A stretch of 64,000 nucleotides of DNA from Macrostomum lignano (GCA_002269645.1 NIVC01002694.1:62001-126000), one strand, 5' to 3'; counted from the first letter of the stretch, positions 1,925 through 60,282 are shown. Numbers and translations: made by a program. The notes: generated from the letters alone by a model not told the origin.

Positions 1925-7132
<5,208 letters not shown>

Positions 7133-17405: not shown

Positions 17406-17420
17406 CCCGCCTCCCTTCCG
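17406..17420 (-). promoter_or_regulatory. Polypurine tract
   Basis: Minus strand cggaagggaggcggg directly abuts the 3' LTR. Confidence 0.85.
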
Positions 17421-17879: not shown

Positions 17880-18300
17880 TCAAGGGCGGCGGGACACGGC
17901 GCGGCGCGCCAAGGCGGAAGGGAGAAACCGGCGCAAGAGCGCCCAAGGCGGAGACACGGCGCAGCGCGCCAAGGCAGAGACGGCGCAACGCGCCAAGGCA
18001 GGAAACGGCGCAGCGCGCCAAGGCAGGAGAACGGCGCGGCGCGCCAGGCGGAGAACGGCGCAGCGCGCCAAGGCGGGAAACGGCGCCACGCGCCAAGGCA
18101 GGAAACGGCGACAGGGCGCCACGGCAGGGGACGGCGCCACGCGCCAAGGCAGAGAACGGCGCCACGCGCCAGGCAGAGGATGGCGCTACGCGCCAAGGCA
18201 GAGGATGGCGCTACGCGCCAAAGGCAGAGGACGGCGCTACGCGCCAAGGCAGAGACGGCGCAGCGCGCCAGGCAGGGACGGCGCCACGCGCCAAAGGCAG
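17880..18300. repeat. GC-rich ~22-bp minisatellite in the element's 3' UTR
   Basis: Unit gcgccaaggcagagacggcgca with length variants. Confidence 0.9.
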
Positions 18301-18754
18301 AGAGAGCGTGCGTGCGGTGCGGTGTGTGTGTGTGTAGTGCTTACTTTTAGTTTACTTTTAGTTTACTTTTGAATATTTGAGCTAAGGCTAATGTCTTATC
18401 TACTATTTGTTTCTAGCGCCGTAGTGTATTCTATAGACTACGGCAACGCCGACCAGGTGCAGTCGGAGTTGGGTGCTGCGATATTATATATATTCTTGCG
18501 TTAGAACAATATAGTATTTATACTGTCGGCATATTATGCTAATTCTGCTAGCGTTTTATTTTTATTTTATTTATTTTAGCTATATAAATTATCAAATTGC
18601 AATGTCGCCGCAGTTTATCCCCTTGACTACGGTGGTTGGCTGTTGGCTGGTACAGCTGTGGAAGTTGTGCACACTAGTATCTGGCAGTGAGTAACAGCTG
18701 TGGCTTGTGTTTTGTGGCTTGCGGCTGGCAGATGCCGCAGGGACCTGTGACCAG

Positions 18755-18962
18755 CAGGTGCCACAGGAGGTAGTTTTACGCCTTGCCCGGGGCGTGAGCT
18801 TGCGGTCTACAGGTGCCGCAGAGACCTGTGGCTGACAGGTGCCACAGGAGGTAGTTTTACGCCTTGCCCGGGGCGTGAACTTGCGGTCTACAGGTGCCGC
18901 AGAGACCTGTGGCTGACAGGTGCCACAGGAGGTAGTTTTACGCCTTGCCCGGGGCGTGAAAA
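18755..18962. repeat. 81-bp tandem repeat (~2.6 copies) just downstream of pol
   Basis: caggtgccacaggaggtagttttacgccttgcccggggcgtga... recurs at 81-nt spacing. Confidence 0.9.
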
Positions 18963-18970
18963 ACTGGCGG

Positions 18971-21900
18971 TTAGTGTCTGCTTCCCCACTGCTGGAGCAG
19001 GTCGGACACTTGACAGGTCCGGTACCTGACAGGCGGGCGGATGGGGCGTCCGTACCTGGATCTGGGTACGTCAGCCGGGGCTGGTGGCTCAGCTGCTTGC
19101 GCAGCGACTGGATTCGCAGCAATCTCAGGTGGTTCTAATTGCTCGGAGGAAGGGTCCCCCAAGGAAGCCGTGTACAGCGACTCTGAGCTGTCTTGGCTGT
19201 GGCTGGTGTCAGTGTCTGTGCTGTCAGTGTCAGTGTCTGGTTGTGGCTGTCCCTCAATAGCTACAGCATCGCCAGCTTCGGCGAATGGTTGGCCTTCTCC
19301 CGCTTCAGCTCCCGCCCCCTCCTCAAAGGCGCCTGAAGCTGGCGGTGGTGGATTTGGCCCTGGCGCTCTGCGTGGGCTCTCTGGCCGGGCAGAGGAAGGC
19401 TGGGGAATGGTGACGAGGCTAAGCTCGCTCGCGGGTCCGCTGGGCGGGTTCACACTAGGCGCTGGAGACCTGGCATGGGTGGCCTCACCATACCGGTCAA
19501 CTACGTCTTGGTAAGTGGGCTGTCTGATGCACGGTTTGAGGCGGTCAATGTTGTAAATGTTATGGCGCGGATTTGGCACCCGATCTGCTGGGTTTAGGAG
19601 ACCATACTCGGGGACTAAACGGTAAGTCCGCTCGGAGCAGCGCTGCACTACTCGGTATGGCCCCAACCACACAGCGGGTTCTATGCCCTTGTGGTTCGGG
19701 TTCAAGACCCAGACTAACTCTCCCTCGTGGAACTCAGCGCGGAGGGCGCGGCGGTCGTAATACCTTTTCTGCCTCTCCTGGGCTTTACCCCTAGTGCGGC
19801 GGGCTAGGGCAGAGGTTTCGACTAGCGTGCGGTGCAACTGGTGGGCGTACCTCTCCGGCTGGTAGTGTTCATTTGGCGGTGGATTGTGACAGAGGTCGAG
19901 CGGTAGTTCGAACTCACGCCCGAAGAAAAGTTTGGCTGGAGTAAATCCGGTGGATTCGGCGACTGTGGCACGGATTGACAGGGCGGCCAGGCGGCTGGCA
20001 AGGGGCCAGTCGCATTGTCTCTCAAGACAGATGGCTCTAATCTGGGCTTTCACCGTCTGGATCATCCTCTCAGCTTTACCGTTAGCCTGAGGGCGACGGG
20101 CTGTGATCCGACCCATGTCAATCTGTAGGAGCCTAGTTAATTCTATCATGGTACTATTGATGAAGGCAGTTCCGTTATCAGACACCAGCTGCTCCATCAC
20201 CCCATACCTGGCAACCCATTCAGTCAGGATGGTTGTGGCAGTGGTCTCTGCGCTGACGTCGGGAACAGGGACTACTTCAACAAACCCGGTGAACCTGTCG
20301 ATCATAACCAGCAGGTACTTGTACCCGTCACACTCTTCGAACGGGCCTGCGTGGTCCACGTGGACAACCTGGTTCGGGTAGCCGGACAGTTCTGGTTGCA
20401 TAGGGGCCTTGAGCTTACGCTTTGACTTCTTAGTCTTAGCGCAAACGGTGCATTCGGCCAGGACCCCCTTGACTATAGTATCTAAGTCGGAAATAACGAA
20501 GCGCGCCTTCAGGGCGGCCATCGTCTTGGTGATACCGCAATGGTTCAACTGGCCATGATACTGAAGGACCAGATGACCGACGTCTGCGGTCTCAGGCACC
20601 ACCAGGCGCCTGTTGGCAGTCTTGGCTTTGGAGGATTTGGCTAAGTACAATAGACCCTCGACTACTTCAAGGTCATTGAATTGAGCCCAGAGTGAGCGCA
20701 TTTCCCGGCTACAACCCTGCAGTTCGGCCTTGGACAATGGCTCAGTCTTACACTGGACACTGGCGATTAGGCGCGCCATGTCAACACAGGAGTCCTGGGC
20801 ATTCTGGGCCCAGATGAGCTCAGGTGGCACTTGGGATTCGGTTTCAGGTTGACGGGATTCAGTCTCTGGGCTAGGAACAGCACCGCTAGCAGTAGCGCGG
20901 ACATTCGGCGTTGGTTCAGCCGGGGCATCTGTGTCAGTCTGACACGCTACGCTAATGCCTATGGTCTGGACGCACACCTGACGCAGTTCTCTAGAGGGGG
21001 GCGTACGCCGGTGCTTTGGGTCTTGGTCCAGGAATTTCCCTTTAAATTCCGGAATCTGGCTGCACGTCGGGCAGTCAAAGTGATCGGCTCTGAATTTTGG
21101 CAGTCTACTAAGAGCGTCAGCAGGCACGTGGTCAACGCCTGGACGGTACTGGACTGTGAAATCGTATTCGGCTATTCGTTCTAGAGTGGACTGCTGGACC
21201 TTCAGCGGGTACAGTTCAATGGTGGCAAGCCATTGGGCCAGCATACCAGTGGCATGCTTCTTAGAATGCAGCCATTTGAGCGCGGCCGCGTCCACCCGGA
21301 CAGTGAAAGGCTTGTCTAATAGATAAGGACGGAAATGCTCGAGCATCAGAACGAGCCCTAGCAACTCCCTCATGGTGGCGCAGTAGTTTCTCTGGCTACT
21401 GTTGAATTTTTTGGATGCGTAAGCTATAACTTGCTCTTGGCCATCTGGCCCGAGCTGGTACAGCACACCCCCAGTGCCGTCAAGCGAGCTATCGCAGTCC
21501 AAAATAAATTCGCGCCCTTTGGCAGAGAGGTCTGGATACGCCAGAATCGGTGGTGAACAGAGGCTATGTTTGAGTTCTTGGAAAGCCCGTTCATGATGCG
21601 GTTGCCATAGAAACGGAGCATCCTTTTTGGCTAAGGCATACAAAGGCGTGGCGATGATTGAGAATCGCGGCACGAATTTCCGGTAATAATTCGCAAATCC
21701 CAAGAATGATAGAAGCTGTTTCTTAGAAAGCGGTTTAGGCCAGTCTTGGACAGCCTGAGTCTTCGCTGGGTCAGCCTCAATGCCCCGGCTAGACACAACG
21801 AACCCCAGGAATGCGACCTTGTCCTTAAACAGCTCACACTTAGACGGCTTAATTTTGAGACCGGCTTTTCTAAGCTGCCAGAGGACCAGCGCGAGATGCG

Positions 21901-22945
21901 CGATCATTTGGTCGTTGTTGACAGCCTTAATGATAATGTCGTCTAAATAGATGAGGCTGACCTTCATCAGGAGAGGTCTAAACACCTTGTGCATCAGTTT
22001 CGCGAAATTGGCAGGTGCCGTCTTGATCCCGAATGGTACTACCTTCCAGCGGAAGGTGCCTTGGGGGCAGGCAAAGGCGGTGTAATCTCTAGCCTCCTCT
22101 TTGATCCCTACCTGCCAGTACGCGGAGGTCAGGTCAAGGCTAGAGAATACAGTGGCCCCGGCAAGGCTGTCAAAAGATTCTTCTATGAGTGGCAGAGGGA
22201 AGCTACACGGCTTGATGAGCTTATTGACGGCCCTATAGTCTATGCAAAGGCGTTGAGTGCCGTCCTTCTTCTTGACCAGAACGATAGGCGACACCCAGTC
22301 AGAGTCACACTCCTCAATGACCCCCTGTTCGAGCATCTGCGCTATGTTCTGGTCTAAGAATTCTTTTTGTGCTGGCGTGGTGCGCCTGTATGGTTGCGCA
22401 ACAGGCTTGGCCTTAGGATCTATTAACTCTATGCCCATCTCGTGTAAATTGGTGTGGCCTAAATCTGCGTTTGATCTAGAAATTTGGCTATTGAAGTAGT
22501 TGAGCAGTTTCAAAACGGTGGCGAGTTGGCCCCTAGACAATTTGGCTTGGTCTAGTTGGAACTGCGTTGTCAGCCATTTGGCTAACTCCCTACTAGGCGG
22601 CGGCAGCTTACTGAGTTGGCTGGTGAGGTTAGCTACATTGTCCAGGCTAAAGTCAGACTCCTTCAGGGTCGTCTGAGCTATGACCTCATGACTATCTAAT
22701 TCCTGGAATGAGGCAATTTCTTGCCCCCTAGTTATCTGAATAGGCTGTTCCCCACTGTTGAGCACGCGCACTAGTATGTGGTTAGTATCGCTAACTGAGT
22801 CTAGAGTCTTGGCTACCAACTGTTCGGTCTCTGGTCCGAGGATCCGGGACATGACTATACCGGAGGTGTACGGCGAAGAGTCGAGGACACGACTGGGGAT
22901 CAAGGTTTCCGAGTGCGGGGGCAATTCTACGGTGCCGGCGGCCAT
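18971..22945 (-). CDS. pol: Pol polyprotein (dUTPase-like N-terminus, reverse transcriptase, RNase H, integrase; no protease, no chromodomain)
   Basis: RT motifs SPIVLVKKKDG, LCIDYR, YLDD; RNase H CDSS...YASK...RELL; integrase HHCC, VDHAGP, SDNG, AER and GPY. ATG at 22945 (the ORF-track start at 22948 is GTG). Confidence 0.97.
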   Translation of the reverse strand: MAAGTVELPPHSETLIPSRVLDSSPYTSGIVMSRILGPETEQLVAKTLDSVSDTNHILVRVLNSGEQPIQITRGQEIASFQELDSHEVIAQTTLKESDFSLDNVANLTSQLSKLPPPSRELAKWLTTQFQLDQAKLSRGQLATVLKLLNYFNSQISRSNADLGHTNLHEMGIELIDPKAKPVAQPYRRTTPAQKEFLDQNIAQMLEQGVIEECDSDWVSPIVLVKKKDGTQRLCIDYRAVNKLIKPCSFPLPLIEESFDSLAGATVFSSLDLTSAYWQVGIKEEARDYTAFACPQGTFRWKVVPFGIKTAPANFAKLMHKVFRPLLMKVSLIYLDDIIIKAVNNDQMIAHLALVLWQLRKAGLKIKPSKCELFKDKVAFLGFVVSSRGIEADPAKTQAVQDWPKPLSKKQLLSFLGFANYYRKFVPRFSIIATPLYALAKKDAPFLWQPHHERAFQELKHSLCSPPILAYPDLSAKGREFILDCDSSLDGTGGVLYQLGPDGQEQVIAYASKKFNSSQRNYCATMRELLGLVLMLEHFRPYLLDKPFTVRVDAAALKWLHSKKHATGMLAQWLATIELYPLKVQQSTLERIAEYDFTVQYRPGVDHVPADALSRLPKFRADHFDCPTCSQIPEFKGKFLDQDPKHRRTPPSRELRQVCVQTIGISVACQTDTDAPAEPTPNVRATASGAVPSPETESRQPETESQVPPELIWAQNAQDSCVDMARLIASVQCKTEPLSKAELQGCSREMRSLWAQFNDLEVVEGLLYLAKSSKAKTANRRLVVPETADVGHLVLQYHGQLNHCGITKTMAALKARFVISDLDTIVKGVLAECTVCAKTKKSKRKLKAPMQPELSGYPNQVVHVDHAGPFEECDGYKYLLVMIDRFTGFVEVVPVPDVSAETTATTILTEWVARYGVMEQLVSDNGTAFINSTMIELTRLLQIDMGRITARRPQANGKAERMIQTVKAQIRAICLERQCDWPLASRLAALSIRATVAESTGFTPAKLFFGREFELPLDLCHNPPPNEHYQPERYAHQLHRTLVETSALARRTRGKAQERQKRYYDRRALRAEFHEGELVWVLNPNHKGIEPAVWLGPYRVVQRCSERTYRLVPEYGLLNPADRVPNPRHNIYNIDRLKPCIRQPTYQDVVDRYGEATHARSPAPSVNPPSGPASELSLVTIPQPSSARPESPRRAPGPNPPPPASGAFEEGAGAEAGEGQPFAEAGDAVAIEGQPQPDTDTDSTDTDTSHSQDSSESLYTASLGDPSSEQLEPPEIAANPVAAQAAEPPAPADVPRSRYGRPIRPPVRYRTCQVSDLLQQWGSRH

Positions 22946-24735
22946 CACTCGTCGAGTTGGAAAATCCCCTTGTCCCCCTCAATGACTGGTACCGACACCC
23001 CTGCTACTAAAGCTCGGCCAGAGTTGAAGTCTAGCAGCATCTCGAAGCTGCGCAGGAAATCCATGCCTAACAGGGCTTCCGTGGTACAGTAAGCAGTGAC
23101 TAGGAATACATGTTGTTTAGTCGTATTACCTAAGTTGATTTCGCAGCGTAGCGACCCTAGGATGTCTACCTGAGAGCCGCCGAAGGCGGTGGCACGCTGC
23201 TTATTGGCACTAGGCGTGAATATGTTATTGACGGGGTCAGCTGCGACCAGTTTGGCTTTCACGTCAGCACCCATGATGCTGGCATTGGCGCCTGAGTCTA
23301 GACAGGCCAGAACTTTAGAGTCTCCTACTCCTAGCTGCACGAAATAGCTAGACTCAAAGGTGTCAGCTGTGTACCCCCCTTGTCGGCATTGTGGATCACT
23401 GTCCCCTGGCTGAGGTTGCACATTACAGGCCTTGTCGTGCTGGCGCCCGGGGTCGACCTGGCGCTGGAATTTCACCCTAGTCCCCCTAAGGCGGTGCTGC
23501 TCGACTAGGCTACGCAGGCTGGGAGACAGTTGGCTAATGTGAACGAACAATTTCTCTGGCAGGTGCTCAGATTGGATGAACCCGTAATTCTGAGACCATG
23601 TGGCAATGGTTCCTAGTTCAGTCGTGACTTTTCCACGGCTGGGCTGCTGATTTTGGCTCCCCCGGGGCTGCTTTGGCGACTGTGGCCTCGGCGAGGGCGA
23701 TGGACAGTCAGCGATCAGGTGATCGGTCTGGCCGCATCGATGGCAAGCCCGCGGAGGGCGAGGAGCTGGCCTAGGTTGTCTATAGGTTTGGCTAACTTGT
23801 GGTGGGCCCCCAGTGGGCTCTGTGCGAGCGGGCCCCTGATTGGTAGTGACAGGCGGAGTGGTCTGGCTTAATCTATTGGCTTGGTCGGTCACCATCTTCT
23901 CAAGCTCAGCGACCCTCTGTTCTAACGCTTTCTTCTCAGCGTCAGGTTCTATGGCACGAACCTTGGCTATAGTAGAAGGCACGTTCAGAAGCTGGCGGAC
24001 CCCGACAAGATCTTTGGCCTTCTGCATCAGCTCTTCTGCAGAGGTGGCACTGTCGGTTTCCTGATCCCATAAGAGGAGCTTTTCGGCGAGGTCCTTATCC
24101 CTCAGCCCATGGCAGAATCTGGCCTTGAGTAGGGGCTTCGCTTCAGCGAGCGAGAGACCCGCTAGTCTAGAATAGGAGACCAGTCTGTCGAAGAAATCAG
24201 ACATCTGCTCATTATGAGATTGGGCGGCAGCAACTAATTCTACGTAGGCCTTGTCCTTCTTCTTGGCATCGGTGTACCTTTCCCTGAGCAGCCGAAGCGC
24301 AGATTCGAAAGGCAACTGGTCACACCGGTAATTAAGATATACCTCTTGGCATTCGGCTGACAGCAAAGATACGAGAATGGCGGACTTCTGGTCCTCAGGA
24401 ACGCGGCAAGTGGCTAGATACGAAGTAAGCTGAGCTTCCCACGTATCAAAGTTCATCTTCGGCTGATAAGCGATTGGAGGGCGAAGGCGTATGTCTGGCT
24501 TCGCAGGCGGCGAGGAATTTGGCGCTAATGGCGAGGAAACAGCGAGACGCTCTTCGAGCATCCGGTGAAGAGAGGCTAAGGTTTGAGTCAACAAGAGTTG
24601 CTCACTAGGAGCTGGCGCGGCGGCAGCAGCTGCGCCTGCTGGCTGCTCGCCGGCATCGACTGCGTCCTGATCTGGCACGGCGGCATCTCCGTCAGCCAAT
24701 GACGCTGCGGCATGGTTGTCCCCGTTGTCGGACAT
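22945..24735 (-). CDS. gag: Gag-protease (capsid-like region, CCHC knuckle, cold-shock domain, aspartic protease)
   Basis: ATG start; CHRCGQTDHLIADC (23704-23745); GTIATWSQNYGFI...LFVHIS (23413-23619); protease LDSGA (23290-23301) and LLGMDFL. Confidence 0.95.
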   Translation of the reverse strand: MSDNGDNHAAASLADGDAAVPDQDAVDAGEQPAGAAAAAAPAPSEQLLLTQTLASLHRMLEERLAVSSPLAPNSSPPAKPDIRLRPPIAYQPKMNFDTWEAQLTSYLATCRVPEDQKSAILVSLLSAECQEVYLNYRCDQLPFESALRLLRERYTDAKKKDKAYVELVAAAQSHNEQMSDFFDRLVSYSRLAGLSLAEAKPLLKARFCHGLRDKDLAEKLLLWDQETDSATSAEELMQKAKDLVGVRQLLNVPSTIAKVRAIEPDAEKKALEQRVAELEKMVTDQANRLSQTTPPVTTNQGPARTEPTGGPPQVSQTYRQPRPAPRPPRACHRCGQTDHLIADCPSPSPRPQSPKQPRGSQNQQPSRGKVTTELGTIATWSQNYGFIQSEHLPEKLFVHISQLSPSLRSLVEQHRLRGTRVKFQRQVDPGRQHDKACNVQPQPGDSDPQCRQGGYTADTFESSYFVQLGVGDSKVLACLDSGANASIMGADVKAKLVAADPVNNIFTPSANKQRATAFGGSQVDILGSLRCEINLGNTTKQHVFLVTAYCTTEALLGMDFLRSFEMLLDFNSGRALVAGVSVPVIEGDKGIFQLDE

Positions 24736-25126
24736 TGTGTAAGGTTGAGTGAGACAAATGAATCAAGCGTGAACGAAAATAAGGCTCCAGAGAAAACGAA
24801 TTGAGGTTGATGACGCGAGAGAGACGAGAGAGATTGCGTCCTACTAACAAAATACGTGCCTGACAGGGGCAAACCGCAAAAAGCCTATAATAGGGGAGAG
24901 TCCTATCACGCAAACCACCCAGACTAACTGTCAGGCAATAGTCCCTACAAACAATCAGCGCACAGCGTAACCTGGCGTGGCTTGGCACACGCAGCGGAGC
25001 TATCTTGGCAGAGCGTAAGCTCGAGCTCAACGCAGTTGACAGCGCGCGTTGCTCAGGGCGACGACCAGCGACGACTCGCGGCGACGAGCGAAGACCGGCC
25101 GAGCAGTCAGGACCCCTGGGCCTGAC

Positions 25127-25620
25127 GTGGCACAGGCTCTCGCAGCCTTGCGGACCGAACCTCAGGCGTGGCACAGGCTCTCGTAGCCTTGCGGACCGAA
25201 CCTCAGGCGTGGCACAGGCTCTCGTAGCCTTGCGGACCGAACCTCAGGCGTGGCACAGGCTCTCGCAGCCTTGCGGACCGTCAGGCAGAAACGTGGCAGG
25301 CCGGCACTCAGTCACGAGCCGGCAGAGCTGAGCAGAATCTTGCTGACGCTTGGTTGCGAGCTGGCAGGGCTGAGCAGAAGTCTTGATGGCGCTGATTACG
25401 AGCTGGCAGGGCTGAGCAGAAGTCTTGATGGCACTGACTTAGTTGCGAGCCGGCAGTGCTGAGTAGGAGTCTCGGTGGTGCTGACTTAGTTGCGAGCCGG
25501 CAGTGCTGAGTAGGAGTCTCGGTGGTGCTGACTTAGTTGCGAGCCGGCAGTGCTGAGTAGGAGTCTCGGTGGTGCTGACTTAGTTGCGAGCCGGCAGTGC
25601 TGAGTAGGAATCTCGGTGGG
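25127..25620. repeat. Tandem arrays (41-bp, 42-bp and 47-bp units) in the element's 5' leader
   Basis: 41-bp cgtggcacaggctctcgtagccttgcggaccgaacctcagg about 4 times; 47-bp gacttagttgcgagccggcagtgctgagtaggagtctcggtggtgct 4 times from 25436. Confidence 0.93.
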
Positions 25621-25627
25621 ACCTCCA
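25609..25627 (-). promoter_or_regulatory. Primer-binding site, tRNA-Gln
   Basis: TGGAGGTCCCACCGAGATT is complementary to the metazoan tRNA-Gln 3' end (...AATCTCGGTGGGACCTCCA, recalled); it lies 6 nt from the 5' LTR. Confidence 0.88.
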
Positions 25628-25633
25628 AAATTA

Positions 25634-26459
25634 TGTCACGTTATTGGCGTAGCGGCCAGCTATGCGGTGACCCTTAAAAGGGCCGTTTTAGTCCCAAAAT
25701 AAGTTGAAGTCAATTCTTGTAAAGCGGATTTTGTAGCGGAGCACTTGGCGATAAAGGCAGGAACTGCCGTAGTTGTCTTTATTGTTAATATCAGTATTAA
25801 GTTGGTTGTTACTGGCAATAAACAGACTATAGCTTTCTGGGCACTGGCGGCTGCAGCAATGGGTTGAATATAATTTGGATATGAAGTCAAGTGGCAGGCG
25901 AATGACACAATGGCGACGTGACGTGAGCAGTGGCTATGAGCACCGTGAAGGCAGTGAAACGTAGTGGTGAGTAGGCGTCGGTCGTGGCGTGAAACAGTCA
26001 AGTAAGTGTGTGAGCAGGCTGGCCCAGACAGAAGGGCCGTGGTGAGAAATAAGGAGGCTCGAGGCAGCCAGACAAACAGATAAGACAGCTAAGAGGCCGC
26101 AGGGAAGGAAACAAGGAACAGGCGGGGAGAGACGAAAAAGGGTGAGGGGTGCCCGCCGCCAGGCGGGGGGTTTAATAAAAGAGCGCAGAGGGGGTAGCGC
26201 GAGCACGAGTGATTTCATTGGCTGGCGAGAGAACTTAAAATTATCGATCGTGCCAATTTTATACGGTTGCGAGAGAGGATAGCAAAATATACAATGAATT
26301 ATAAATTGCCACAAAATCGTTGGGCACTACTACAAGTAAACGTCGCAATAAACGAATGGAAAAGTTTAGTTGAAACGGTGAAACTGAAGGGTTGAATGAC
26401 TATGGAGAACAGCAGTCCAACGGCCCTTTTCGGGACCACCTTAAACTGACAACGTCACA
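25634..26459 (-). repeat. 5' LTR
   Basis: Direct repeat of 16580-17405; the minus strand carries a CCAAT box, a TATA-like motif and AATAAA. Confidence 0.97.
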
Positions 26460-44438: not shown

Positions 44439-45595
44439 TTAATCAGAACCCGTCGACTCAGAAGGCTTAGTAAGTGGCTTGGACGCCTCAACAACACTTT
44501 CAGCTGCAGGAGCATTATCAAACACTTCATCGTCAATGTCTGCCACCGTTTCATTGACTTTTTCGTCTACACTTTTCTCGTCACTCGGTTTCGTTGGAAT
44601 TGCAGCACCGGCTTCAATATTGTCGTTTGTTGATTCTTCAGTAGCAGCGGTAGTTTTAATCGCATCTGCAACTGAATCAGCAGCTACTACTTTGCTAACC
44701 GGAGGCGTATTATTACTAGTAGTAGCAGTATCAGCTTCAGATTCGCAGGCGGCGGCAACTTTGGCGGTTTCTTCAGCAGCTTCCGCTACAGATACAGCGC
44801 CAGTTTTGTAGTCCGCAATCGCAGCATCCGATGAAGCTGTGCAATCGCCGGCTCCGCAACCGCTGCTGCTACCGCCGTCGCTTTCAATATCGTCAGATTC
44901 GTCATCAATTTCAGCCGCAGTTGCGGGCGCCTGATCAAAAGCGGCGCCAGACAACGGCGCGCCAACTTCGCTACCCGAACCGGAACAAGAGCCGGAACCG
45001 GACGCTTCTTCAAGATCGTCATCGCCAGACAGCGAATCGTTAGCCATATGATCGGCGGTTGCCGCGCTTGAAACCGAGGCGGCAGCGGCCTCAGCACCGG
45101 CATGCGTCGAGGCCGAAGCGGCGCCGGCTGCGGCGGCGGCGGTGGAATCCGAAGAGTTCGACACAATCATGTCTTCCTCGTCCTGATCGAATACGATTTT
45201 CTGACCAGCCGGATCGATGCAGCTAACAACGCTCAAGCATTTTAGTAGGCCTCGTAGATACTTATCAACTCGGCGATAGTGCTTATTAGGCGATAGGGCC
45301 AATTCGCAGACGCGTTGAATAGTAAATGGGGCGTTAGTGAACTGGTCCAGTGTTGACAGGACAGTCTGGCGGTAGACGCTCAGTTGAAATGTCTCCATAT
45401 TAGGCCTGGGATAATAATCGTCAATAGAAGCCATTGATGAGTCGCTTAAAAAACTTTCAATAGCGGATTCCAATTTGACGCGAATTAGCGGCTTAACCAG
45501 GTGCCAAGGCGCGTTGGTGATGCCACTGCGAGACAGGTTGACCAGATAGTGCTCCAGGTCTGGCGGCACATCGCTTGTTGCTGATTGGGCAAACT
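44439..45595 (-). CDS. PPP4R2: Protein phosphatase 4 regulatory subunit 2 (main exon; short first exon not found)
   Basis: PWHLVKPL and APFTIQRVCEL...PNKHY...DKYLRGL..LSVVS are the PPP4R2 domain, followed by an acidic tail. cacag| acceptor at 45596. Confidence 0.9.
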
Positions 45596-46226
45596 CTGTG
45601 AAAAGATTGATAAACATAACAATTGAAAAAGGCTGTTGAATTGACAATAGGTACTATGAATATCTAGAATACAATTAAGGTTGGGAATCAAACCAAGCTT
45701 CAGTCTTTTACATAACAACTTTAGTCAAACAATTGAGCATGATAGGCAACAAATTACCATCATGAAATTTCCTATCCTGATTGGAAATGTCAAATTATTC
45801 TTAGCATATTGGATATTAAATTCAAATGACATTACAGTATATACCCTATTAGTGGATTGTAGGCCCATATGCAATATTCAAATTGTACAGAAACCCTGCT
45901 TTTATTGCTCAATAGGCAAAAAAACTGAATAAATTCAACTGTGGAAATTTAAATGTAAAAAAAGACAAACTAATATCCAATTCAAAACATTGATCTTATT
46001 TAACCCTTAAAATTACATAGGTACAATAATATAATTTTAACTTAGATCTAAATATACTAGTATAGAAAAGTAACAAAAATCAAGACTTTAGCTTTTTAGA
46101 CAATTGAGATATTGAATGATTCTACCAAAAGGTTAGATTTTTTCATAAGCCCGGCCTAGTATATTCAATAAGCCCCTATCTCAGTGCAACATTGATGAGC
46201 CTTTAAATTTTATTAGCAGTTGAACA

Positions 46227-46825
46227 CATGTTCTTGCATTAGCTCTTTTTTGGACATTGGCCTTTATCTAGATAGAGCTTTTAAACCCTCAACAGGTGGC
46301 ACTAGATGACTGTGGTTATCCAATTGCAATTTTTTTAGTCTTCTAACCAAGCCTTGATAGTGGGCAAACCTCAACAGCTAGATATCCTCAGCTAGTGTCT
46401 TTTCATTATCATTCAATACCATTAGTACCTTTTGTAAGTAGTATTAGGTGACCATGGACACCTTGTTGCAAATTTTTCTAGTTTTATAAATCAAGCCTTG
46501 ATAGTAGACAAGCTACAAATATTGGATAGTGTAAGCATTTCATTATCTCCTAACACTATTAGCATCTTTAATAGATAGTACTACTAGGTGACTATGGATA
46601 TCTTGACTACAAATTTCTCTAGTTTTGCTAATCAAAATGCAATAGTAGGCAAACCTCAACTGTTAGATATCCTTAGCTAGTCTTGATTAAAGCTTGTTTA
46701 GCAAAACTAGAAAGATGCACAATAGGGTAACCATAGTCACCTAGTGCCACTTGTTGAAAGTCTAGAAACTATATCTGGGTAAAGGCCAATGCTTAAAAAA
46801 GTTGGAGATAATGCAAACATATGTG
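46227..46825. mobile_element. Decayed foldback-type element (~140-bp inverted arms, internal tandem copies)
   Basis: 46227-46370 versus the reverse complement of 46690-46825; differences are mostly transitions. Confidence 0.7.
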
Positions 46826-47394
46826 GTTAATATGCTAATGAATTTTGGAGGCTTGGCAATATTGCACTAAGGTGCAATGCTAATTGGCACACAGGGAAAT
46901 AATGAATATATTAGTGCATATAGGAAAAATATGACCTTTGGTAGGATTGTTAAATATTTTTGATGATCTAAAAGGCTAGTGACTTGGTTCATGCTTACCT
47001 GGTAAGTGTTAAAAATATTACAACAAGTTAGCCAATTATCTTGAATTTTATATGCTTGCATTGCTCCTTTTTGGTATATCAAAAATTGGCGAGGAAAGAT
47101 TTTTCCTTTTTATTGGTAGTTTGAAAGGCAAAAATATATATAATGTGTATATAGAGTTAAAAATCTATTGCTTGAGTCTTTAACCCTAAGGACTTAAGAG
47201 TTTCTCTTATAGAAGCTTATGCAAGGACACATTAGAGACAAAGATTAATGCAGATAACAAAAAAAATTAATGGCTCATGAAACTTTTATATTCATTTATT
47301 TTTATTGTTCAATCCTTTGTACCTATTTAATCAAATGTTCCAATAATATTTTTAAGTCTTTAAAGTTTTTAAAGTTTATTATTGAATACATACC

Positions 47395-48520
47395 TATCAA
47401 CCTCTTTCAAAGGACTGCCTGCTATCCTTAATTTGCCTTTGCTTTATCTGCTCATTGAGATAGAGGCTATGAAATCTACCTCTTGACTCATTAGAGATAA
47501 ATGTTAAATTAAGTGTCCTCTGGCTTTATGCCAATAAAAACTATAATCTTATATATGTACTTTGTCCACTGCAACCTTACCAATATCTACATTGACCTAG
47601 ACAATGTCCACCTTCCACTCTCAATATTAGAAGGGGCTTTTTAACTACTATCCTTAGTCAAAACAGAATTCCACTGAATATCAGCATAAACTGACATAGC
47701 CAAGGCATTCACTGTTTCATTGATAGCTCACTGTTTAATAGCCATGCTAGAGTGGGTATTGCTATCTTTCATGAGGATAAAATGCTTTTCTAGGAAAGTC
47801 TACACCTCAGTTTTCTAATCTAAAATGTGTGCCATTGAGCAGTGTATCTAGCACTTGCTCTAGGCAAATATTAATCATTTTGATATTAATTTTTACACTA
47901 ATAGCCAAGTTGCTATCAAGGCCTTAACTACTAACAAAATCTCTGCTGTTACAGTATCTTAATGCCACTGTAATATGCAATCTCTTTTAGTCTTTAATAG
48001 GATTAAAACTATTTAGATCTCTAGTCAAAGCAATATCCCAAGTAATAAGCTTATAGATTCTTTTGCCAAAGAAGGTAGCAACCTTAATGGCAACTATTAT
48101 GTAATAAGGCTATCCCTTCTCAGTTGCAAGTCACTTTCTATAACAATAGGTGGCTCTATCAGCAACATGGGAATAGTTGCATTGACCATAAGCAGACCTA
48201 ATCTGCATAGCCTGAATAAGAAAGTCTTTGAATATTTAATCTCACTTAATAGAACCAACCTTAAGGAGATATGCATAGTCTTAACTAGCCATAGATTCTT
48301 CTAAAGATATCTCATTGCAAACTGGCTGCCTTCCTACTTGTCCTTTCTATAGTATATGAGAAGACTATGGAGTATCATATCATCTTTTGCCCTTATTTAA
48401 TAAAGTATAGTACAAATATCTTGGCCACTCCCAATAGATAGACAAGTTGACTATCATAGACAATATCCGTAGCCTGTGCTCTTTTGTCTAAGATACTGCC
48501 AGATAAGGGTCACTGATACT
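47395..48520 (+). mobile_element. Decayed non-LTR retrotransposon 3' part (RT thumb, RNase H, C-terminal Cys region)
   Basis: Remnants LPAILNLPLLYL, HCFIDSS (FTDGS), YTNSQ (TDSQ), [21 protein letters not shown] (WIPGH..IPGNELAD.LAKEG), LTSH (LTGH); many stops. Confidence 0.8.
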
Positions 48521-48869
48521 TCTTCTATGAACTTGCTAAATACTAGTGGGGGCTAGGCAGACTCCCAAGGTTAATCCTTGGTCTCTTACTCTCTTTTTTA
48601 TTTTGGGGTTGCAATAGGGGCCTCATGGCCTTTTTTGTGGCACTTGTGGCCTTTTTATTAGTAGGTAATAAAATAAGTAAATAGCCTAAATGATACAAGT
48701 GAAAACAGTGTAGTATATCTAGTCTTATAGAATATTTTGCTATGTGTACAACTTTCTTTCTTAGAAAATACAGTATTTAAATGTCCGCCAAATAGTAATA
48801 ATTTTGTTTAACTGTTGTGCACTCAAATAATATTCTACAAAATTTAAAAATTTGTTATAAATGCATTGT

Positions 48870-49477
48870 CTGATTGGTATAAATAGGAGCCTAGAATGGG
48901 CCAGGAAAAACAACCGCTTGCTTGCTCAAGTAAGATCGTGACAATTAATCCACTTAATAAAAATCCTAAGCATTCTTACTTGGCTTATTCATTTCTATAG
49001 TATTAAGCCCCTTGTTGGGAGTATCAGAAACCGCTAAAAGCGAGAATCGCCTCAGGGCAAGAAGCACTACAGAATAGTAAGATTGCTTCAAGGCAGGAAA
49101 AATGTCTAAGGGCAGGGAAAACACATAAGGCTGTTGACCCTCTGATCCAGGGAACACCTAGGACTGAGAGAAAACTTATAGGAGTAAATAGAGTAAATAG
49201 TGCCATTAGACTGCTCAAGCCAAAGAGTACAGTACATGTACAGACGCTACCAATAAGATAAGTAGACTACCAATATAGAAGTAGATAGAAAAGTAGTCAC
49301 ACTACCAATAAGTAAGGTAATAAAGTACAAAGTAACAAAGTACATTTGTGCAAAAATATATTTTAAATTAAATTAAGTATAGGGGAATTAGTCCTGTAAT
49401 AATAGGTAGTGGCATTGTGAGATTATTTATAGATAGAAAGTCAGCCTTTTTGACAACTTTGGTGTCAGCGGTAGGAT
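48870..49477 (+). mobile_element. Possible decayed LTR end with tRNA-Leu-type PBS
   Basis: ...gaca, 4 nt, then TGGTGTCAGCGGTAGGAT (49460-49477), similar to the known Leu PBS TGGTGTCAGAAGTGGGAT; ATTGG plus TATAAATA upstream. Left boundary unknown. Confidence 0.4.
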
Positions 49478-49819
49478 AATTTCAGTGAGAACAATCATGC
49501 CTGTTACAACTTTGATGGCTAATTAGTGAGATTTTAATAGAGGGAAGCTAAACCCTTATCACATAAGATTTAAAAACTTAATAGCTAAAGCACTAAACTG
49601 ACTAAGTTCAAATTTTAAGACATTATTTTTTAGATTATTAATTAAAGCTGCAACTAGTCTAAGTTACTTTTTGATAAAAAATCTAAGCTTTGCTTTTGCA
49701 TATTAGAGGGCCTATTAATTAATCATTTCTAGCTATCTATTATAATAAGAATAGGATTTAAAATAAAACATCTTGAATAAAAGCTTGGCTCCAAACATTT
49801 AACCTATGCTATCATACTT

Positions 49820-49977
49820 GGGTGCAACCTTGGGATTCACTCAGCCATTTCTATTGGCAACACACACATGTATATCGCTATTGGACAGAATAGTAGTCAC
49901 GTGACTGCTCTCAGCCAATAGCAACTTACATGTGTGTTGCCAATAGAAACGGCCAGGTGATTCCCAAGGTTGCGCAC
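49820..49977. repeat. ~155-bp imperfect palindrome centred on GTCACGTGAC
   Basis: The arms are complementary over about 75 bp with no loop. Confidence 0.88.
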
Positions 49978-51881
49978 GTATGTATGCTATACTAGGATGT
50001 ACTGGGTTTATTTTTTGTGCACAGAGTATTCATATATGTAACCTAAATTTTAAAATTGCACTTTGAGATTAAAAGTTGGATGCAGTTTGGGTGCAGTCTT
50101 CTAACCTATTTTTCCATTGAAGCCTGATTTGCACTGCCTTAAAAATAAGAAAAAAGAGAAATTGCACTCTGAGCCTTAAAATCTTGTCCCTGGCAAAAAC
50201 CCTAAGGGTATACTATATATAGCAAGTATGCAGAACAAACAATTTGGCCACAAGACACACAGAACAATAGAGGATTTTTTGCTAGAAAAGTGTGCATATT
50301 TTTGCATTAGATTTAAATGGCCTAATACTAATATTAATTTACTATAGCTCTTCTAGAGCCATAGAAGATTTTTTAAATGAAGTTGTGTATACATGCACAT
50401 TTATTTAATTTTTACTTTCTGCACAGAATGCATTATTTGTAGGGATGAATTTTGCCCTGGCCCTGGATGCCATGGTTATTTTATGTTTTGAATAGGTCTA
50501 TAAATACTATATATATATCAAAATTAGTTGTCTTATCCCAATATATTATTTTTAGATAGTTTGTTACATTACAATTGTCATTGAGTCAAACAACAATACT
50601 TACCACTTAATGAGTTTACCAAGTCATTACTTTGACCCATTGTTGAAAGAACCATTGCTAAGAGGGCCTAAGCAACCTTTAGTTTAAGCTTTCTTTGGAA
50701 AAGACTTCTTACTTTACTAGGTGTCACTATCGAAATAGTAATCTTAGTAGCACATACACTAGACAGAATCGCAAATTCGATAAACAGTACAGTGGTCGTG
50801 GAAACACGCAAACGTTCAAACACTAAGCTTAGAATTCCTAAAAAATGAAGAAAATATAGCTAAACTAGGTGTAGAGTAAAGCTGATCCTGATAATACCTA
50901 CAAGGGCTACTGAATTAATTCAAAGATTAATCATATTATTAAAGAAAGTATAAAATCATCTGCAATGGGTACTTGCTCATGTGATTTTTAAATTTTCTGA
51001 GTAGTGGTGTTACGCCTGCTCCTTCCAAATTCGACCTTCGGAATTGAATAGTAGATCATTTCTCTGTCGTATAAGAAACAGCTAAAATACTAAATAATTA
51101 CAAATGAAGGATAATTTTAATTGCCTAAATTAAAGTACTACAGTCGTCTTTATTTAACTTAAAATTAACTTTTGTTAATACTGTTAAAATAATGTTTTGA
51201 CTGACAACAAGTATTTTAACATTTGATTAAGGAAAAATTAATTGAATATTTTTTGCAAGCATTTCAACTCGACGAAAGTCGACGGTATTTGTGTATTTTG
51301 TGGGTGAGTAGTTCATTGAATTTGTTTTTGGAATTTAGTTAAGAGTTTCTCTGTAATCTAAATTAAAAATCTTGCTTCTGTAAAAGTTTAGTAGAATAGC
51401 AGAATGAGTAAAGTAACACAACTATCGTATGTATAGTCCATGGTTTTAGGATTAGGATGATAAAAAGTCCTGCATGGAAAAATAAAACAAATTAAATCGT
51501 TTGCTTTCTTGCCAAAACATGTTTGGAAATCTATCAAACTTGTTTAGATCCGCTCCTACAGTTTGAACTCAGATTAATTTTTGCAAACTAATGTTCTTTT
51601 GCTTCATCTTATATGCTTTCGAAACAAAAATTGACGAATACAACCGCATTTTATAAAATTTATTCTATTCCAGTATTTATTTTCTTTTTCCATTAATTAA
51701 AACTTTAAAATATCTAAAATTTTGACTCTTATGGATTGTAAAGAATAAAAAATAAACGCAGTATGAATACATTTAAGGAGAATTGCTCCATAACCAATAG
51801 ATAAATTTTCGTTGTATCAACCTTTTAATATTATGCAGGTTCTTCTTTTTGGTCGAATACAATTACCAACTTATCAACGGA

Positions 51882-53961
51882 ATGGATCGCAATATGCCAG
51901 TACAGTCGGGTGGGTTGTGGAACTCAACTCCAGTGCAGTACAGTGCTCAAACCCAGCAGCTGCTTAAAGGTAAAAACCGCACTCAAGTACAGCTTGAAGT
52001 TCACTTTAACATACTATATTTAATTTATAATGCAAGCAAAAATTATAAAAAAATCTTGTACTTACATTTCAGACATGATGCAAGAATCAAAGCTTACTAA
52101 TTTGCAAATGAGAAAAGTGTCAGAGACAATGAAAAGTAAGGATTAAGCTTTTGCAAAAAATGGCCTAAGACTTTGCCAACACATACCATTTCATTACAGC
52201 TACAATTTTTTATATCTGCATTTTTTTCTAAATTCAGAAGGCTCCAGTCTGCCGACAGATCTGCCTCCGACGTCATCTGCCAGGCAAAGGTCAAACTCTG
52301 CCGGTAAACCGAGAGGTCCAATGCCGAAAGTTCTCAATCCAAAGTGAGACGTAGTTTTGTTTCCTTTACCAACCGTCTTTACAACATACTTGACCTCTAG
52401 TGCCATATCAGGATGAGGTCAGAAAGTTCAGGGTTCAAAGTTCATTTACGAGCTAACTTTCATAAGCGCTTCTGGGCCATGGTTACTCGTTTATCATATT
52501 GTTGATCAACTAGCTTCTTACTCTTGGTTAATTTAGGAAGTTGTTAAGGTTAGAATTCTGAAAGTATTTTAGAGCTACACAATTATTTTTTTAATTATTT
52601 TTATGAGATTTCTAAAACAGGATTGTTTGAGTTTTAGAGCACAATCAAATGAATACTATCATTAGAAAGAAAACATACGAACCGTATTTTGGCAAAGCAT
52701 CTTTTAACGCCGATTTAACAAAACGTTATTCCGTAAGTTTCGAATCATGCTTTAACAAAAAGCACCTTTTGTAGATCTAAGAGACAAGGGGCGCACGTAC
52801 TTTAAGTCACGTGATCCCCCCCGATCCAAATGACAAATTCCTGCGTATGCCTCTGTGGCTCAGCTTTGTCAAGCAGTCAGAATAGAGGCCACAGTAGCTC
52901 AGTTTTACAAAAGAAGCTGAAATTTCCCTCACCCACCAGAAACTATCAATCGAGTCTGCGTACGCGCGAACAAATCGTTGCTACGGGAGCCTACGAAAAG
53001 CCGGCCTACCGGCCAACGGGCCCGTCCGGTCGAAATCAGGACGCTGAGAAGCGACGACTGGCGAACCGCATGGCCTTCGGTGACGAGTGCCCGCCAGACG
53101 ATGGACGCGGGGACGTCGGCGGCAGCGGCGGCAGACGCAAAGGCGGAGTGAGGCGGATGACTCTGGAAGCCCCCGCTCCGGAGCCGACGCTGGACCGGTT
53201 CGACGAACTGGCCGAGGAAGTTGAGGACAGGCGTCGCTTCCTCGACCAGATGGAGGCGGCCGGGCAAGGCGCCAAGTATCGGGCCAAGATTCAGGCGGAA
53301 ATATCGCAAGTGCGTGTCCACGGGGTTACGAGTAGATTATCTACCGCGGTCATTCCCGATGGGCTGGAAAAATTATATGCATCCTATACTTAAGACAGCT
53401 TCGGGCCCCCAGGAACCGGCGGCTCTATGCATGATATGGGGCCACTGGTGCTGGCGCCCCTTTGGTGCTGGCGCCCCTGATGCTAAAGATTCTGGTGCTA
53501 AAGCCCCTAGTGCTAAAGCCCCTTGTGCTGACGCACCTGCTGTATAATAAGCTTAATGTTAATATAATAAGCTTAATGCTTAACGTATAATAAGCAATTA
53601 CCGATCGGTTTTTTAAAAGCCGCCCTACAACGGAAGCAAATTGAAGATATTTTTTGTCTTAATTATAAAAACTTATGTCTGCTATACATGTAAATTTTAA
53701 ATCGGCTCAATTTTATAACAGTATATTTCAATTACTAAAAACTTTCTAGATATGCTTTACCATATAGCCGGTCATATTTTTTTCCGTTGAATATTTTTTG
53801 CGAACAATACTACTGTAGACACTACTAAATAGTAGCAAAACAGGTAAATTTAAGCCATGTCGCAATTTTCATTCCAGCTCGTCAGAGAGATGGAGATTAT
53901 TGACAAGAAGCGCAACGAAGAGCTGGAACGAATGATGAGGGCGGAGCGGAGCGGTCAGTAG
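51882..53961 (+). CDS. C22orf23: UPF0193/EVG1 family protein, 236 aa: join(51882-51969,52073-52135,52238-52343,52940-53309,53878-53961)
   Basis: MMQESKLTNLQ, GAYE, EKRRL, DRFDELAEEVEDRRRFL..ME..GQG..Y...I.AEISQ, REME.ID match the EVG1 family as recalled. All introns are GT-AG and in phase; total 711 nt. Confidence 0.88.

Positions 53962-59784: not shown

Positions 59785-60282
<498 letters not shown>

What the first reader, a model, noticed from the sequence alone, without database searches (positions are those of the whole stretch)
47395..48520. RIP-like hypermutation (CpG to TpA, CpA to TpA) of an old LINE in an animal genome
Seen: conserved RNase H motifs are altered in a consistent direction: ATT GAT AGC for T-D-G (47719), AAT AGC CAT GCT AGA GTG for N-G-R-A-G-A (47737), ACT AAT AGC CAA for T-D-S-Q (47897), TAG for Trp (48014), AGT AAT AAG CTT ATA GAT for G-N-E-L-A-D (48041). 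I found about one CpG in 1.1 kb, TpA is abundant, and the young gypsy element is CpG-rich. Inference: several changes need both bases of an ancestral CpG to mutate (AAC GAG to AAT AAG; GCC GGA to GCT AGA). Known: ordinary methyl-CpG decay mostly stops at TpG/CpA, whereas onward conversion to TpA is the fungal RIP signature. This may be an undescribed repeat-targeted mutation system. Ancestral codons are reconstructed by eye.
Basis: partly seen in the sequence, partly recalled or inferred. Interest (0 to 1): 0.88.

Follow-up and report, generated by a model that had tools for sequence, protein, structure and literature searches.

The report
Methylation-type decay of old flatworm LINE
A dead LINE fragment in the flatworm Macrostomum lignano sits in a 5-kb intergenic block that has lost almost every CpG and is riddled with C-to-T changes, which looks like the footprint of local germ-line DNA methylation rather than a new RIP-like defence.

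Summary
The window comes from Macrostomum lignano. Window 47364-48633 (+) is a 5'-truncated LINE fragment with an RNase H domain, about 20 stop codons and about 12 frameshifts. Against them, 68-74% of 194 inferred coding changes are C>T or G>A, on both strands alike. The per-site C>T:T>C ratio is 12, against about 2.4 in recent mutations at this locus. Fifteen of 16 CGN codons lost their CpG (5 TG, 5 CA, 5 TA).

The RIP reading is not supported:
- CpG loss covers the whole intergenic spacer 45594-50730, not only the LINE.
- The context order is CpG (about 14x baseline), then CpA/TpG (37% mutated), then other contexts (about 20%).
- The share of double hits (TpA) matches independent second hits.
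- The fungal RIP substrate and composite indices are negative, and CpA/TpG is not depleted.
- C>T and G>A changes are randomly interleaved.
- Young copies of the same family are not hypermutated.

M. lignano keeps DNMT1 and DNMT3. Residual CpGs in the block still vary about 6x more among three homeologous copies than CpGs outside it. Best reading: long-standing local cytosine methylation with deamination. This is a known kind of process, of modest interest. A residual non-CpG C>T excess remains unexplained.

The parts
45594..50730 (.). CpG-depleted, AT-rich block that fills the spacer between the divergent PPP4R2 and UPF0193 genes. Depletion is strongest in 45594-48785 (CpG o/e 0.04) and weaker in 48786-50730 (o/e 0.24).
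   Evidence: The block holds 16 CpGs in 5.1 kb where about 125 are expected. Control windows of the same GC (0.33) have CpG o/e 0.90. The block is present in all three homeologous loci.
47364..48633 (+). 5'-truncated, heavily decayed non-LTR (LINE) retrotransposon fragment. It covers the end of the RT-linker region, the RNase H domain and the C-terminal Cys/His region.
   Evidence: A frameshift-aware alignment to intact M. lignano family proteins gives 415 aligned codons, 249 of them identical, with about 12 frameshifts and about 20 stops.
47707..48079 (+). Remnant of the RNase H domain (IHCFIDSS ... SFAKEGS).
   Evidence: It aligns to residues 406-534 of P0005, which match Pfam PF00075 RNase_H at E=4e-13. 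The decayed translation itself no longer hits Pfam.
46245..46801 (.). Decayed foldback-like repeat. It has 82-nt inverted arms (46245-46326 and 46720-46801) around degenerate units of about 142 bp.
   Evidence: Found. The arm mismatches of this and the other inverted pairs in the block total 32 transitions to 7 transversions, showing that the transition excess is not confined to the LINE.
45820..46938 (.). CpG-free segment of 1119 bp that is present in this locus but absent from both homeologous loci.
   Evidence: There is no target-site duplication and no terminal inverted repeat, so a deletion in the other haplotype is the likelier reading.
49824..49973 (.). Hairpin with 43-nt arms that are 88% complementary, inside the weaker part of the block.
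   Evidence: Four of its five mismatches are transitions.
44439..45593 (-). PPP4R2 gene. It forms the left boundary of the block and is CpG-rich (o/e 1.1-1.3).
51245..53961 (+). UPF0193-family gene. It forms the right boundary of the block.
   Evidence: Gene call in L001, converted to window coordinates, and Pfam.
16580..26459 (-). Young Ty3/gypsy LTR retrotransposon, used as the CpG-normal contrast.
   Evidence: Its LTRs (16580-17405 and 25634-26459) are 99.76% identical with no substitutions. The gag and pol ORFs are intact. CpG o/e is 0.7-1.05.

Best explanation
An old LINE copy inserted 5'-truncated into the spacer between PPP4R2 and UPF0193, before the three homeologous copies of this locus diverged. 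The whole spacer has since been subject to cytosine methylation in the germ line or neoblast lineage. This step is inferred, on the ground that M. lignano retains DNMT1 and DNMT3. Deamination of 5-methylcytosine removed nearly every CpG, at roughly 14 times the background C>T rate. Each former CpG first became TpG or CpA. The remaining C or G then mutated independently at the rate of ordinary CpA/TpG sites, so about a third of former CpGs are now TpA. A lesser excess of C>T at CpA/TpG, and possibly at other contexts, adds to the AT drift. It would fit the known CpG >> CpA side-preference of DNMT3-type enzymes, but its cause is not established. The young gypsy element, the genes and the other AT-rich spacers of the window are not affected. 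Shown here: the directional mutation spectrum, its context dependence, its confinement to the block, its gradual and unclustered character, and continuing CpG hypermutability in the block. Inferred: that methylation is the cause.
For: Organism and enzymes:
- The organism is M. lignano.
- DNMT1 and DNMT3 are retained and 5mC is present at low levels (PMC11292947 and PMC9246332, read).

CpG loss confined to the block:
- CpG o/e is 0.04 in the block and 0.90 in control windows of identical GC.
- CpG is not hypermutable outside the block (17/1245 CpG positions variable against 67/4542 non-CpG). Inside it, 3/35 residual CpG positions vary among the homeologs, against 19/1321 non-CpG (p=0.016-0.017).

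Mutation spectrum of the LINE:
- There are 132 C>T/G>A changes among 194 inferred substitutions. The share is 72-74% after outgroup polarisation.
- The strands are symmetric, at 61/204 C>T against 68/199 G>A.
- The changes are spread evenly along the element.
- C>T and G>A are randomly interleaved, with 61 runs observed against 61.0 expected.

Context dependence:
- CGN codons ended as 5 TG, 5 CA, 5 TA and 1 CG. Mutated fractions are 37% at CpA/TpG, 19% at CpC/GpG and 23% at CpT/ApG.

Block-wide effect and controls:
- Non-LINE inverted repeats in the block show Ti:Tv of 32:7. Repeats elsewhere in the window show 0.5-1.0.
- Young copies of the same LINE family show 32% C>T/G>A against 23% for the reverse transitions.

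Precedent:
- TE-targeted methylation with CpG loss in the TE and its flanks is documented in animals (PMC8857917, PMC7431005).
Against: - No methylation data were examined, so methylation of this block is inferred only from its mutational footprint.
- Invertebrate methylation is usually on gene bodies. Here the genes are CpG-rich and the spacer is depleted.
- Non-CpG C>T is also raised, at about 20% of sites in CpC/CpT contexts against 2.6% for T>C. That is a ratio of about 8 against a baseline of about 2.4, which pure CpG methylation does not explain. The confidence intervals nearly touch, however.
- The baseline spectrum rests on only 38 polarised transitions, partly in coding DNA.
- Ancestral states come from proteins, so third codon positions and many neighbouring bases are unknown.
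Confidence: 0.7

Rival explanations
1. A RIP-like, homology-dependent deamination system mutates repeated DNA (CpG and CpA to TpA), as in fungi.
For: - There is a massive, both-strand C:G>T:A excess.
- CpA/TpG sites are mutated about 2x more often than other non-CpG cytosines.
- TpA o/e is raised by 0.15 over controls.
- The block is made of several old repeats.
Against: - CpG, not CpA, is the dominant target.
- CpA/TpG is not depleted, at o/e 1.11 against 1.10 in controls. The RIP substrate index is 1.39-1.43 and the composite index is negative, no different from control DNA.
- Double hits are no more frequent than independent hits predict.
- There is no strand-coordinated clustering.
- Thirty-three near-identical young copies of the same family are not affected. 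The identical gypsy LTRs and a mariner insertion in L003 are also unaffected.
- The literature searched here describes RIP only in fungi.
Confidence: 0.07
2. Plain old age under the genome-wide AT-biased mutation spectrum, with no local targeting.
For: - The recent spectrum is AT-biased, and the predicted equilibrium GC of about 28% is close to the block's 33%.
- The element is old, with non-C>T divergence of about 7% of sites.
Against: - Equally AT-rich spacers in the same window keep CpG o/e of about 0.9.
- CpG is not hypermutable outside the block.
- The per-site C>T:T>C ratio is 12.4 in the LINE against 2.4 at baseline (p about 1e-5 to 1e-10).
- Ti:Tv is 2.9-4.6 in the block against 0.5-1.4 elsewhere.
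Confidence: 0.08
3. AID/APOBEC-like editing of the LINE cDNA at the time of retrotransposition, or of single-stranded DNA later.
For: The changes are dominated by C>T/G>A, and the target is a retroelement.
Against: - First-strand cDNA editing would give G>A on the sense strand only. Here C>T (29.9%) and G>A (34.2%) are equal and unclustered.
- The effect extends to non-LINE DNA across the spacer.
- CpG hypermutability continues long after insertion.
Confidence: 0.03
4. The copy derives from an older, natively AT-rich and CpG-poor subfamily, so the differences reflect evolution of the master lineage rather than decay.
For: Only proteins of the modern family were available as the ancestral proxy.
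Against: - The copy carries about 20 stops and about 12 frameshifts.
- The bias persists (72-74%) at positions where the modern family agrees with outgroup LINEs.
- Apparent reverse transitions number only about 12.
Confidence: 0.02

Closest known systems
Methyl-CpG decay of methylated transposable elements and their flanks, as in vertebrate Alu/L1 and TE-targeted methylation in cnidarians and other invertebrates (PMC7431005, PMC8857917)
   Same: - CpG loss is local and runs at about 10-15x the background transition rate.
- The products are TpG and CpA.
- The loss spreads to DNA around the TE.
- Young insertions are still CpG-rich.
- The organism has DNMT1 and DNMT3.
   Different: - The genome is otherwise CpG-normal, gene bodies included, so the depleted block stands out as an island.
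- Decay has gone far enough that a third of former CpGs are now TpA.
- There is an additional non-CpG C>T excess.
- No methylome was checked here.
Fungal repeat-induced point mutation (RIP), including the CpG/TCG-biased RIP-like patterns of basidiomycetes (PMC3318451)
   Same: - C:G>T:A transitions occur on both strands of repetitive DNA.
- The result is an AT-rich block full of stop codons.
- There is some CpA preference.
   Different: - No depletion of the target dinucleotide CpA/TpG is seen.
- The RIP indices are negative.
- There is no evidence of dependence on duplication.
- Young multi-copy elements are untouched.
- The accumulation looks gradual and unclustered.
- It is an animal, and no RID-type enzyme is known or was examined.
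APOBEC3-type editing footprints in retroelements of vertebrates (from my own knowledge, not checked here)
   Same: There is a G>A/C>T excess in a retroelement copy.
   Different: - The pattern here is strand-symmetric and unclustered.
- It is dominated by CpG.
- It extends beyond the retroelement.
Non-CpG (CpA) methylation by DNMT3-family enzymes, and C>T enrichment in all contexts in methylated plant TEs (from my own knowledge, not checked here)
   Same: The context order CpG >> CpA > other matches the side-preference of DNMT3.
   Different: Whether M. lignano methylates CpA at all is unknown.

Membership tests
Fungal-type RIP | C:G>T:A transitions dominate and affect both strands | tested here: met
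   C>T or G>A make up 68-74% of changes. The two strands are alike, at 61/204 C>T against 68/199 G>A.
Fungal-type RIP | The preferred target dinucleotide (CpA/TpG) is depleted and the RIP indices are positive: TpA/ApT high, (CpA+TpG)/(ApC+GpT) below about 1.03, composite index above 0 | tested here: not met
   The substrate index is 1.39-1.43 and the composite index is about -0.3, the same as in control DNA. CpA/TpG o/e is 1.11 against 1.10 in controls.
Fungal-type RIP | It acts on duplicated sequence only (homology-dependent) | tested here: inconclusive
   The effect covers a whole spacer containing several different repeats. Young multi-copy family members and identical LTRs are unaffected. 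Genome-wide copy numbers were not available.
Fungal-type RIP | A RID/Dim-2-type cytosine methyltransferase homologue is present, and action falls in a premeiotic stage | not testable with these tools
   The M. lignano genome could not be searched.
Methylation-driven CpG decay | CpG is lost selectively relative to base composition and to neighbouring DNA | tested here: met
   CpG o/e is 0.02-0.04 against 0.90 in GC-matched controls. Fifteen of 16 CGN codons lost their CpG.
Methylation-driven CpG decay | The products are TpG/CpA, and further change occurs at the background rate | tested here: met
   CGN codons ended as 5 TG, 5 CA and 5 TA. The 33% TA share matches the 37% mutation of ordinary CpA/TpG sites.
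Methylation-driven CpG decay | The organism has maintenance and de novo DNA methyltransferases | not tested
   Taken from the literature only: DNMT1 and DNMT3 are conserved and 5mC is low in M. lignano (PMC11292947, PMC9246332, PMC10658182).
Methylation-driven CpG decay | The region is actually methylated | not testable with these tools
   There is indirect support only. Residual CpGs of the block vary about 6x more among homeologs than CpGs outside it (3/35 against 17/1245, p=0.016).
Non-LTR (LINE) retrotransposon with RNase H | An RT plus RNase H ORF2 architecture in the family | tested here: met
   P0010 has RVT_1 plus RNase_H, and P0005 has RNase_H. The fragment aligns collinearly to these proteins.
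Non-LTR (LINE) retrotransposon with RNase H | 5' truncation and a 3' end at the ORF2 terminus | tested here: met
   The alignment starts at residue 92 of the composite (the post-RT linker) and runs to the C-terminus. There is no RT core upstream. The exact clade was not determined.

The most novel reading that the evidence does not exclude
Macrostomum lignano has a locally targeted cytosine-to-thymine mutator that acts on selected repeat-rich intergenic blocks. Its context order is CpG >> CpA > other. It could be DNMT3-dependent non-CpG methylation or DNMT-catalysed deamination, functionally akin to fungal MIP/RIP. It would still be active today, and it would spare gene bodies, which is the reverse of the usual invertebrate methylation pattern.
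Probability: 0.12. Interest if true: 0.75.

Novelty: new member of a known kind. Interest (0 to 1): 0.33.

Why it matters
A 2022 review states that genome-wide methylation patterns are unknown for any free-living flatworm (PMC9246332). This locus gives a sequence-only indication that in M. lignano cytosine methylation, or something with the same mutational footprint, is aimed at particular repeat-rich intergenic DNA and not at gene bodies. It also suggests that the process is still operating. If that holds genome-wide, CpG-depleted islands would be a cheap map of the methylated compartment. The extra non-CpG C>T load would then deserve a mechanistic look. It does not, on present evidence, reveal a new RIP-like defence in animals.

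Tried and rejected
- Pfam on the decayed translation gave no hit.
- Exact-protein look-ups of two window MFS ORFs found nothing, because the start codons were wrong. The PPP4R2 protein did identify the organism.
- DNA of an intact family member could not be obtained. All close relatives are UniRef-only gene models without contigs, and the window holds no second copy. Ancestral states therefore had to be inferred from proteins.
- I checked whether the private insertion in L003 was a younger copy of the same LINE. It is a mariner-like element.
- The other long CpG-free stretch of the window (5055-5974) is a satellite whose unit lacks CpG, so it is irrelevant.
- TRF found no tandem array in the block. 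The degenerate 142-bp units were found by seed extension instead.
- The first polarisation of homeolog differences, with L002 as outgroup everywhere, was wrong for the upstream half, where the genealogy differs. It was redone by region.
- Wasik et al. 2015, the primary source for M. lignano methylation, is not held in the library.

Full report
**Origin of the window**

A PPP4R2 ORF at 44439-45647 (-) is identical to a gene on contig NIVC01002694.1 of assembly GCA_002269645.1. Its cluster mates are named Macrostomum lignano. Two further contigs carry near-identical homeologous copies of the locus, L002 and L003. They are about 99% identical to the window.

**Checking the observation**

The interval 47395-48520 holds a single CpG, at 48468, at GC 0.353. 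About 34 would be expected. The probability of one or fewer is about 1e-12. Most of the rest of the window has CpG o/e of 0.7-1.3.

A conceptual translation of the interval, with stops as X, found three M. lignano proteins at E=1e-65 to 9e-23.

| Intact family | Decayed copy |
|---|---|
| CFTDGSLFNGRAGAG | [15 protein letters not shown] |
| YTDSQAAIKAL | [11 protein letters not shown] |
| IIWTPGH | TI*ISSQ |
| LGNELADSLAKEGS | [14 protein letters not shown] |

P0005 matches Pfam RNase_H, and P0010 matches RVT_1 plus RNase_H. The family is therefore a non-LTR retrotransposon with an RNase H domain. The decayed translation itself no longer matches Pfam.

A frameshift-aware protein-to-DNA alignment places the fragment at 47364-48633 (+). 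It has 415 aligned codons, of which 249 are identical, with about 12 frameshifts and about 20 stops. It is 5'-truncated just after the RT core.

**Direction of change**

The ancestral codon was taken as the codon of the intact residue closest to the present codon. This gives 194 substitutions:

| Change | Count |
|---|---|
| G>A | 73 |
| C>T | 59 |
| T>C | 6 |
| A>G | 5.8 |
| A<>T | 22.5 |
| Other transversions | 27.7 |

- C>T and G>A together make up 68% of changes. The share rises to 72-74% when the count is restricted to positions where the intact family agrees with one to four outgroup LINE proteins. The polarity is therefore not an artefact of master-lineage evolution.
- Per site at codon positions 1-2, C>T is 61/204 and G>A is 68/199, with no strand difference (p=0.39). 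A>G is 5/245 and T>C is 6/182.
- The per-site ratio of C/G transitions to A/T transitions is 12.4.
- The load is even along the element.
- GC at codon positions 1-2 fell from about 0.49 to 0.34.

**Baseline spectrum**

Singleton differences among the three homeologous loci were polarised region by region. They give 23 C>T and 15 T>C changes, a per-site ratio of about 2.4. The predicted equilibrium GC of about 28% is close to the actual spacer GC. Outside the block there is no CpG hypermutability.

The LINE is therefore about five times more C>T-biased than recent mutation at the same locus (p about 1e-5 to 1e-10). As a second control, 33 young gene models of the same family (at least 88% identical) carry 37 unique derived single-nucleotide amino-acid variants. 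Of these, 32% are C>T/G>A and 23% are the reverse transitions. This control has a survivorship caveat, because only copies with open reading frames become gene models.

**Context dependence**

Some neighbouring bases are fixed by the ancestral amino acid, and these give the cleanest context estimates.

| Context | Mutated |
|---|---|
| CpG (CGN Arg codons that lost the CpG) | 15/16 |
| CpA/TpG (Gln, His, Cys, Trp, Met) | 22/59 (37%) |
| CpC/GpG | 10/52 (19%) |
| CpT/ApG | 6/26 (23%) |

- The 16 CGN arginine codons are now 5 TG, 5 CA, 5 TA and 1 CG.
- CpA/TpG against the other non-CpG contexts gives p=0.035.
- Codon-boundary data agree. G at position 1 is mutated 11/11 times after a present C, 25/50 after T, 5/20 after G and 2/22 after A. 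C at position 2 is mutated 7/7 times before G, 8/18 before A, 4/15 before C and 9/50 before T.
- I scaled these fractions by the non-C>T divergence of the copy. On that rough scale CpG mutated at about 14x the baseline C>T rate, CpA/TpG at about 4-6x, and other contexts at about 2-3x. For the last class the confidence intervals nearly touch those of the baseline.
- The 33% of former CpGs that are now TpA is what a fast first hit followed by an independent second hit at the CpA/TpG rate predicts. No concerted CpG>TpA mechanism is needed.

**The effect belongs to a block, not to the LINE**

- CpGs are almost absent from 45594 to 48785 (3 sites) and sparse up to 50730 (16 sites in total, against about 125 expected).
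- The block is exactly the spacer between the start codon of PPP4R2 (45593, minus strand) and the UPF0193-family gene, which begins at about 51245.
- Symmetrised dinucleotide ratios for the block and for GC-matched control windows are shown below.

| Measure | Block 45594-48785 | 31 control windows |
|---|---|---|
| GC | 0.327 | 0.332 |
| CpG o/e | 0.04 | 0.90 |
| TpA o/e | 0.99 | 0.85 |
| CpA/TpG o/e | 1.11 | 1.10 |
| ApG/CpT o/e | 1.26 | 0.96 |

- The fungal RIP substrate and composite indices are negative. The substrate index is 1.37-1.43 and the composite index is about -0.3, the same as in the control DNA. TpA/ApT, at 1.05-1.10, exceeds the usual 0.89 cut-off, but the control DNA does too (0.91).
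- The non-LINE part of the block contains a decayed foldback-like repeat (46245-46801) and a hairpin (49824-49973). Their arm mismatches total 32 transitions to 7 transversions.
- Diverged repeats elsewhere in the window have Ti:Tv of 0.5-1.0. One example is 32008-32593 against 35970-36554, with 33:42 and CpG o/e 0.91.
- The only other long CpG-free stretch, 5055-5974, is a satellite and is irrelevant.

**Tempo of the process**

- The LINE fragment and the CpG-free state are shared by all three homeologs. Most of the decay therefore predates their divergence.
- Among the homeologs, residual CpG positions of the block differ by transitions at 3/35 sites. The figures are 17/1245 for CpG positions outside the block (p=0.016) and 19/1321 for non-CpG C/G inside it (p=0.017).
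- Ti:Tv among the homeologs is 22:8 inside the block and 84:77 outside it (p=0.044). The numbers are small, but they suggest the process continues.
- Along the LINE, C>T and G>A changes are randomly interleaved: 61 runs against 61.0 expected, and the longest run has p=0.37. This argues against processive single-strand deamination and against a few RIP-like bursts.
- Young insertions within the block in other homeologs are CpG-normal or nearly so. They are a mariner-like element in L003 (CpG o/e 0.67) and 300-bp GC-rich inserts.
- The gypsy element at 16580-26459 has LTRs without a single substitution and normal CpG.

**Mechanism**

M. lignano is reported to retain DNMT1 and DNMT3 and to have low-level 5mC (PMC11292947, PMC9246332, PMC10658182). 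The primary paper is not held in the library. TE-targeted methylation in invertebrates, and CpG loss in methylated TEs and their flanks, are both documented (PMC8857917, PMC7431005).

The most economical account is long-standing methylation of this repeat-rich spacer, with deamination. The rate excess of about 14x at CpG is in the range I recall for methylated CpGs in vertebrates (not checked here). The CpA excess would fit the CpG >> CpA side-preference of DNMT3 enzymes, which is general knowledge and was not tested here.

Two points remain unexplained. One is the modest C>T excess at CpC and CpT contexts. The other is the ApG/CpT enrichment of the block.

**Rival explanations**

- A RIP-like system is disfavoured. 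CpG is the dominant target, CpA/TpG is not depleted, the RIP substrate and composite indices are negative, the changes are unclustered, and young multi-copy relatives are intact.
- Pure age under the genome-wide spectrum is contradicted by the CpG-normal, equally AT-rich controls and by the transition excess that is specific to the block.
- APOBEC-type cDNA editing is contradicted by strand symmetry and by the effect on non-LINE DNA.
- A natively AT-rich subfamily is contradicted by the stops, the frameshifts and the outgroup polarisation.

**Verdict**

The data point to methylation-type decay of a discrete block, not to a new repeat-induced mutation system. It is a new instance of a known process in an organism whose methylation landscape is poorly described. 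Interest is modest. A small residual chance remains of a more unusual, locally targeted cytosine mutator.

Noticed in passing
window 16580-26459 (-): Apparently intact, very young Ty3/gypsy element. Its LTRs of 826-827 bp are 99.76% identical with no substitutions. Its gag-protease ORF gives weak Pfam hits to a cold-shock domain and to PNMA, alongside the zinc knuckle and aspartyl protease.
   Followed up: partly
window 31471-32754, 38213-39637, 41484-42845 (all -), plus a fragment at 35970-36554: Tandem array of single-exon-looking MFS transporter genes. There is also an 86%-identical extra fragment (Ti:Tv 33:42, CpG normal), which I used as a mutational control.
   Followed up: partly
window 2417-2972, 3917-4440, 5053-5968, 6757-6982 and 59770-60290: Several satellite or microsatellite-like arrays. 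The 5053-5968 array is CpG-free simply because its unit has no CpG. The arrays at 6757-6982 and 59770-60290 share the same short-period repeat.
   Followed up: partly
L003 7855-9202 (inserted at about window 47394-47511): A 1348-bp mariner-like element is present only in this homeolog. It has terminal inverted repeats of about 30 bp (TACGAGGTGTATTCAAAAAGTTCTTTTCGG...), GC 0.48 and CpG o/e 0.67. It sits inside the 5' end of the old LINE.
   Followed up: partly
window 45820-46938: A 1119-bp CpG-free segment is present in the window but missing from both homeologs. The breakpoints are clean, with no target-site duplication and no terminal repeats. Whether it is an insertion or a deletion is unresolved.
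   Followed up: partly
L001/L002/L003 alignment (window about 34.5-55.6 kb): The genealogy of the three homeologous copies switches along the locus. L001 is closest to L002 upstream of PPP4R2 and closest to L003 downstream. Divergence is 0.3% in places and 2.3% in others, which suggests recombination or gene conversion between the copies.
   Followed up: partly
window 45594-48785: ApG/CpT (o/e 1.26-1.41) and CpC/GpG (about 1.2) are enriched relative to GC-matched control DNA (0.96 and 0.98). Simple CpG decay does not explain this.
   Followed up: no
window 48786-50730: The right-hand part of the spacer is only partly CpG-depleted (o/e 0.24), and its content was not identified. It includes a 19-bp tandem duplication at 49247-49285 and the hairpin at 49824-49973.
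   Followed up: no
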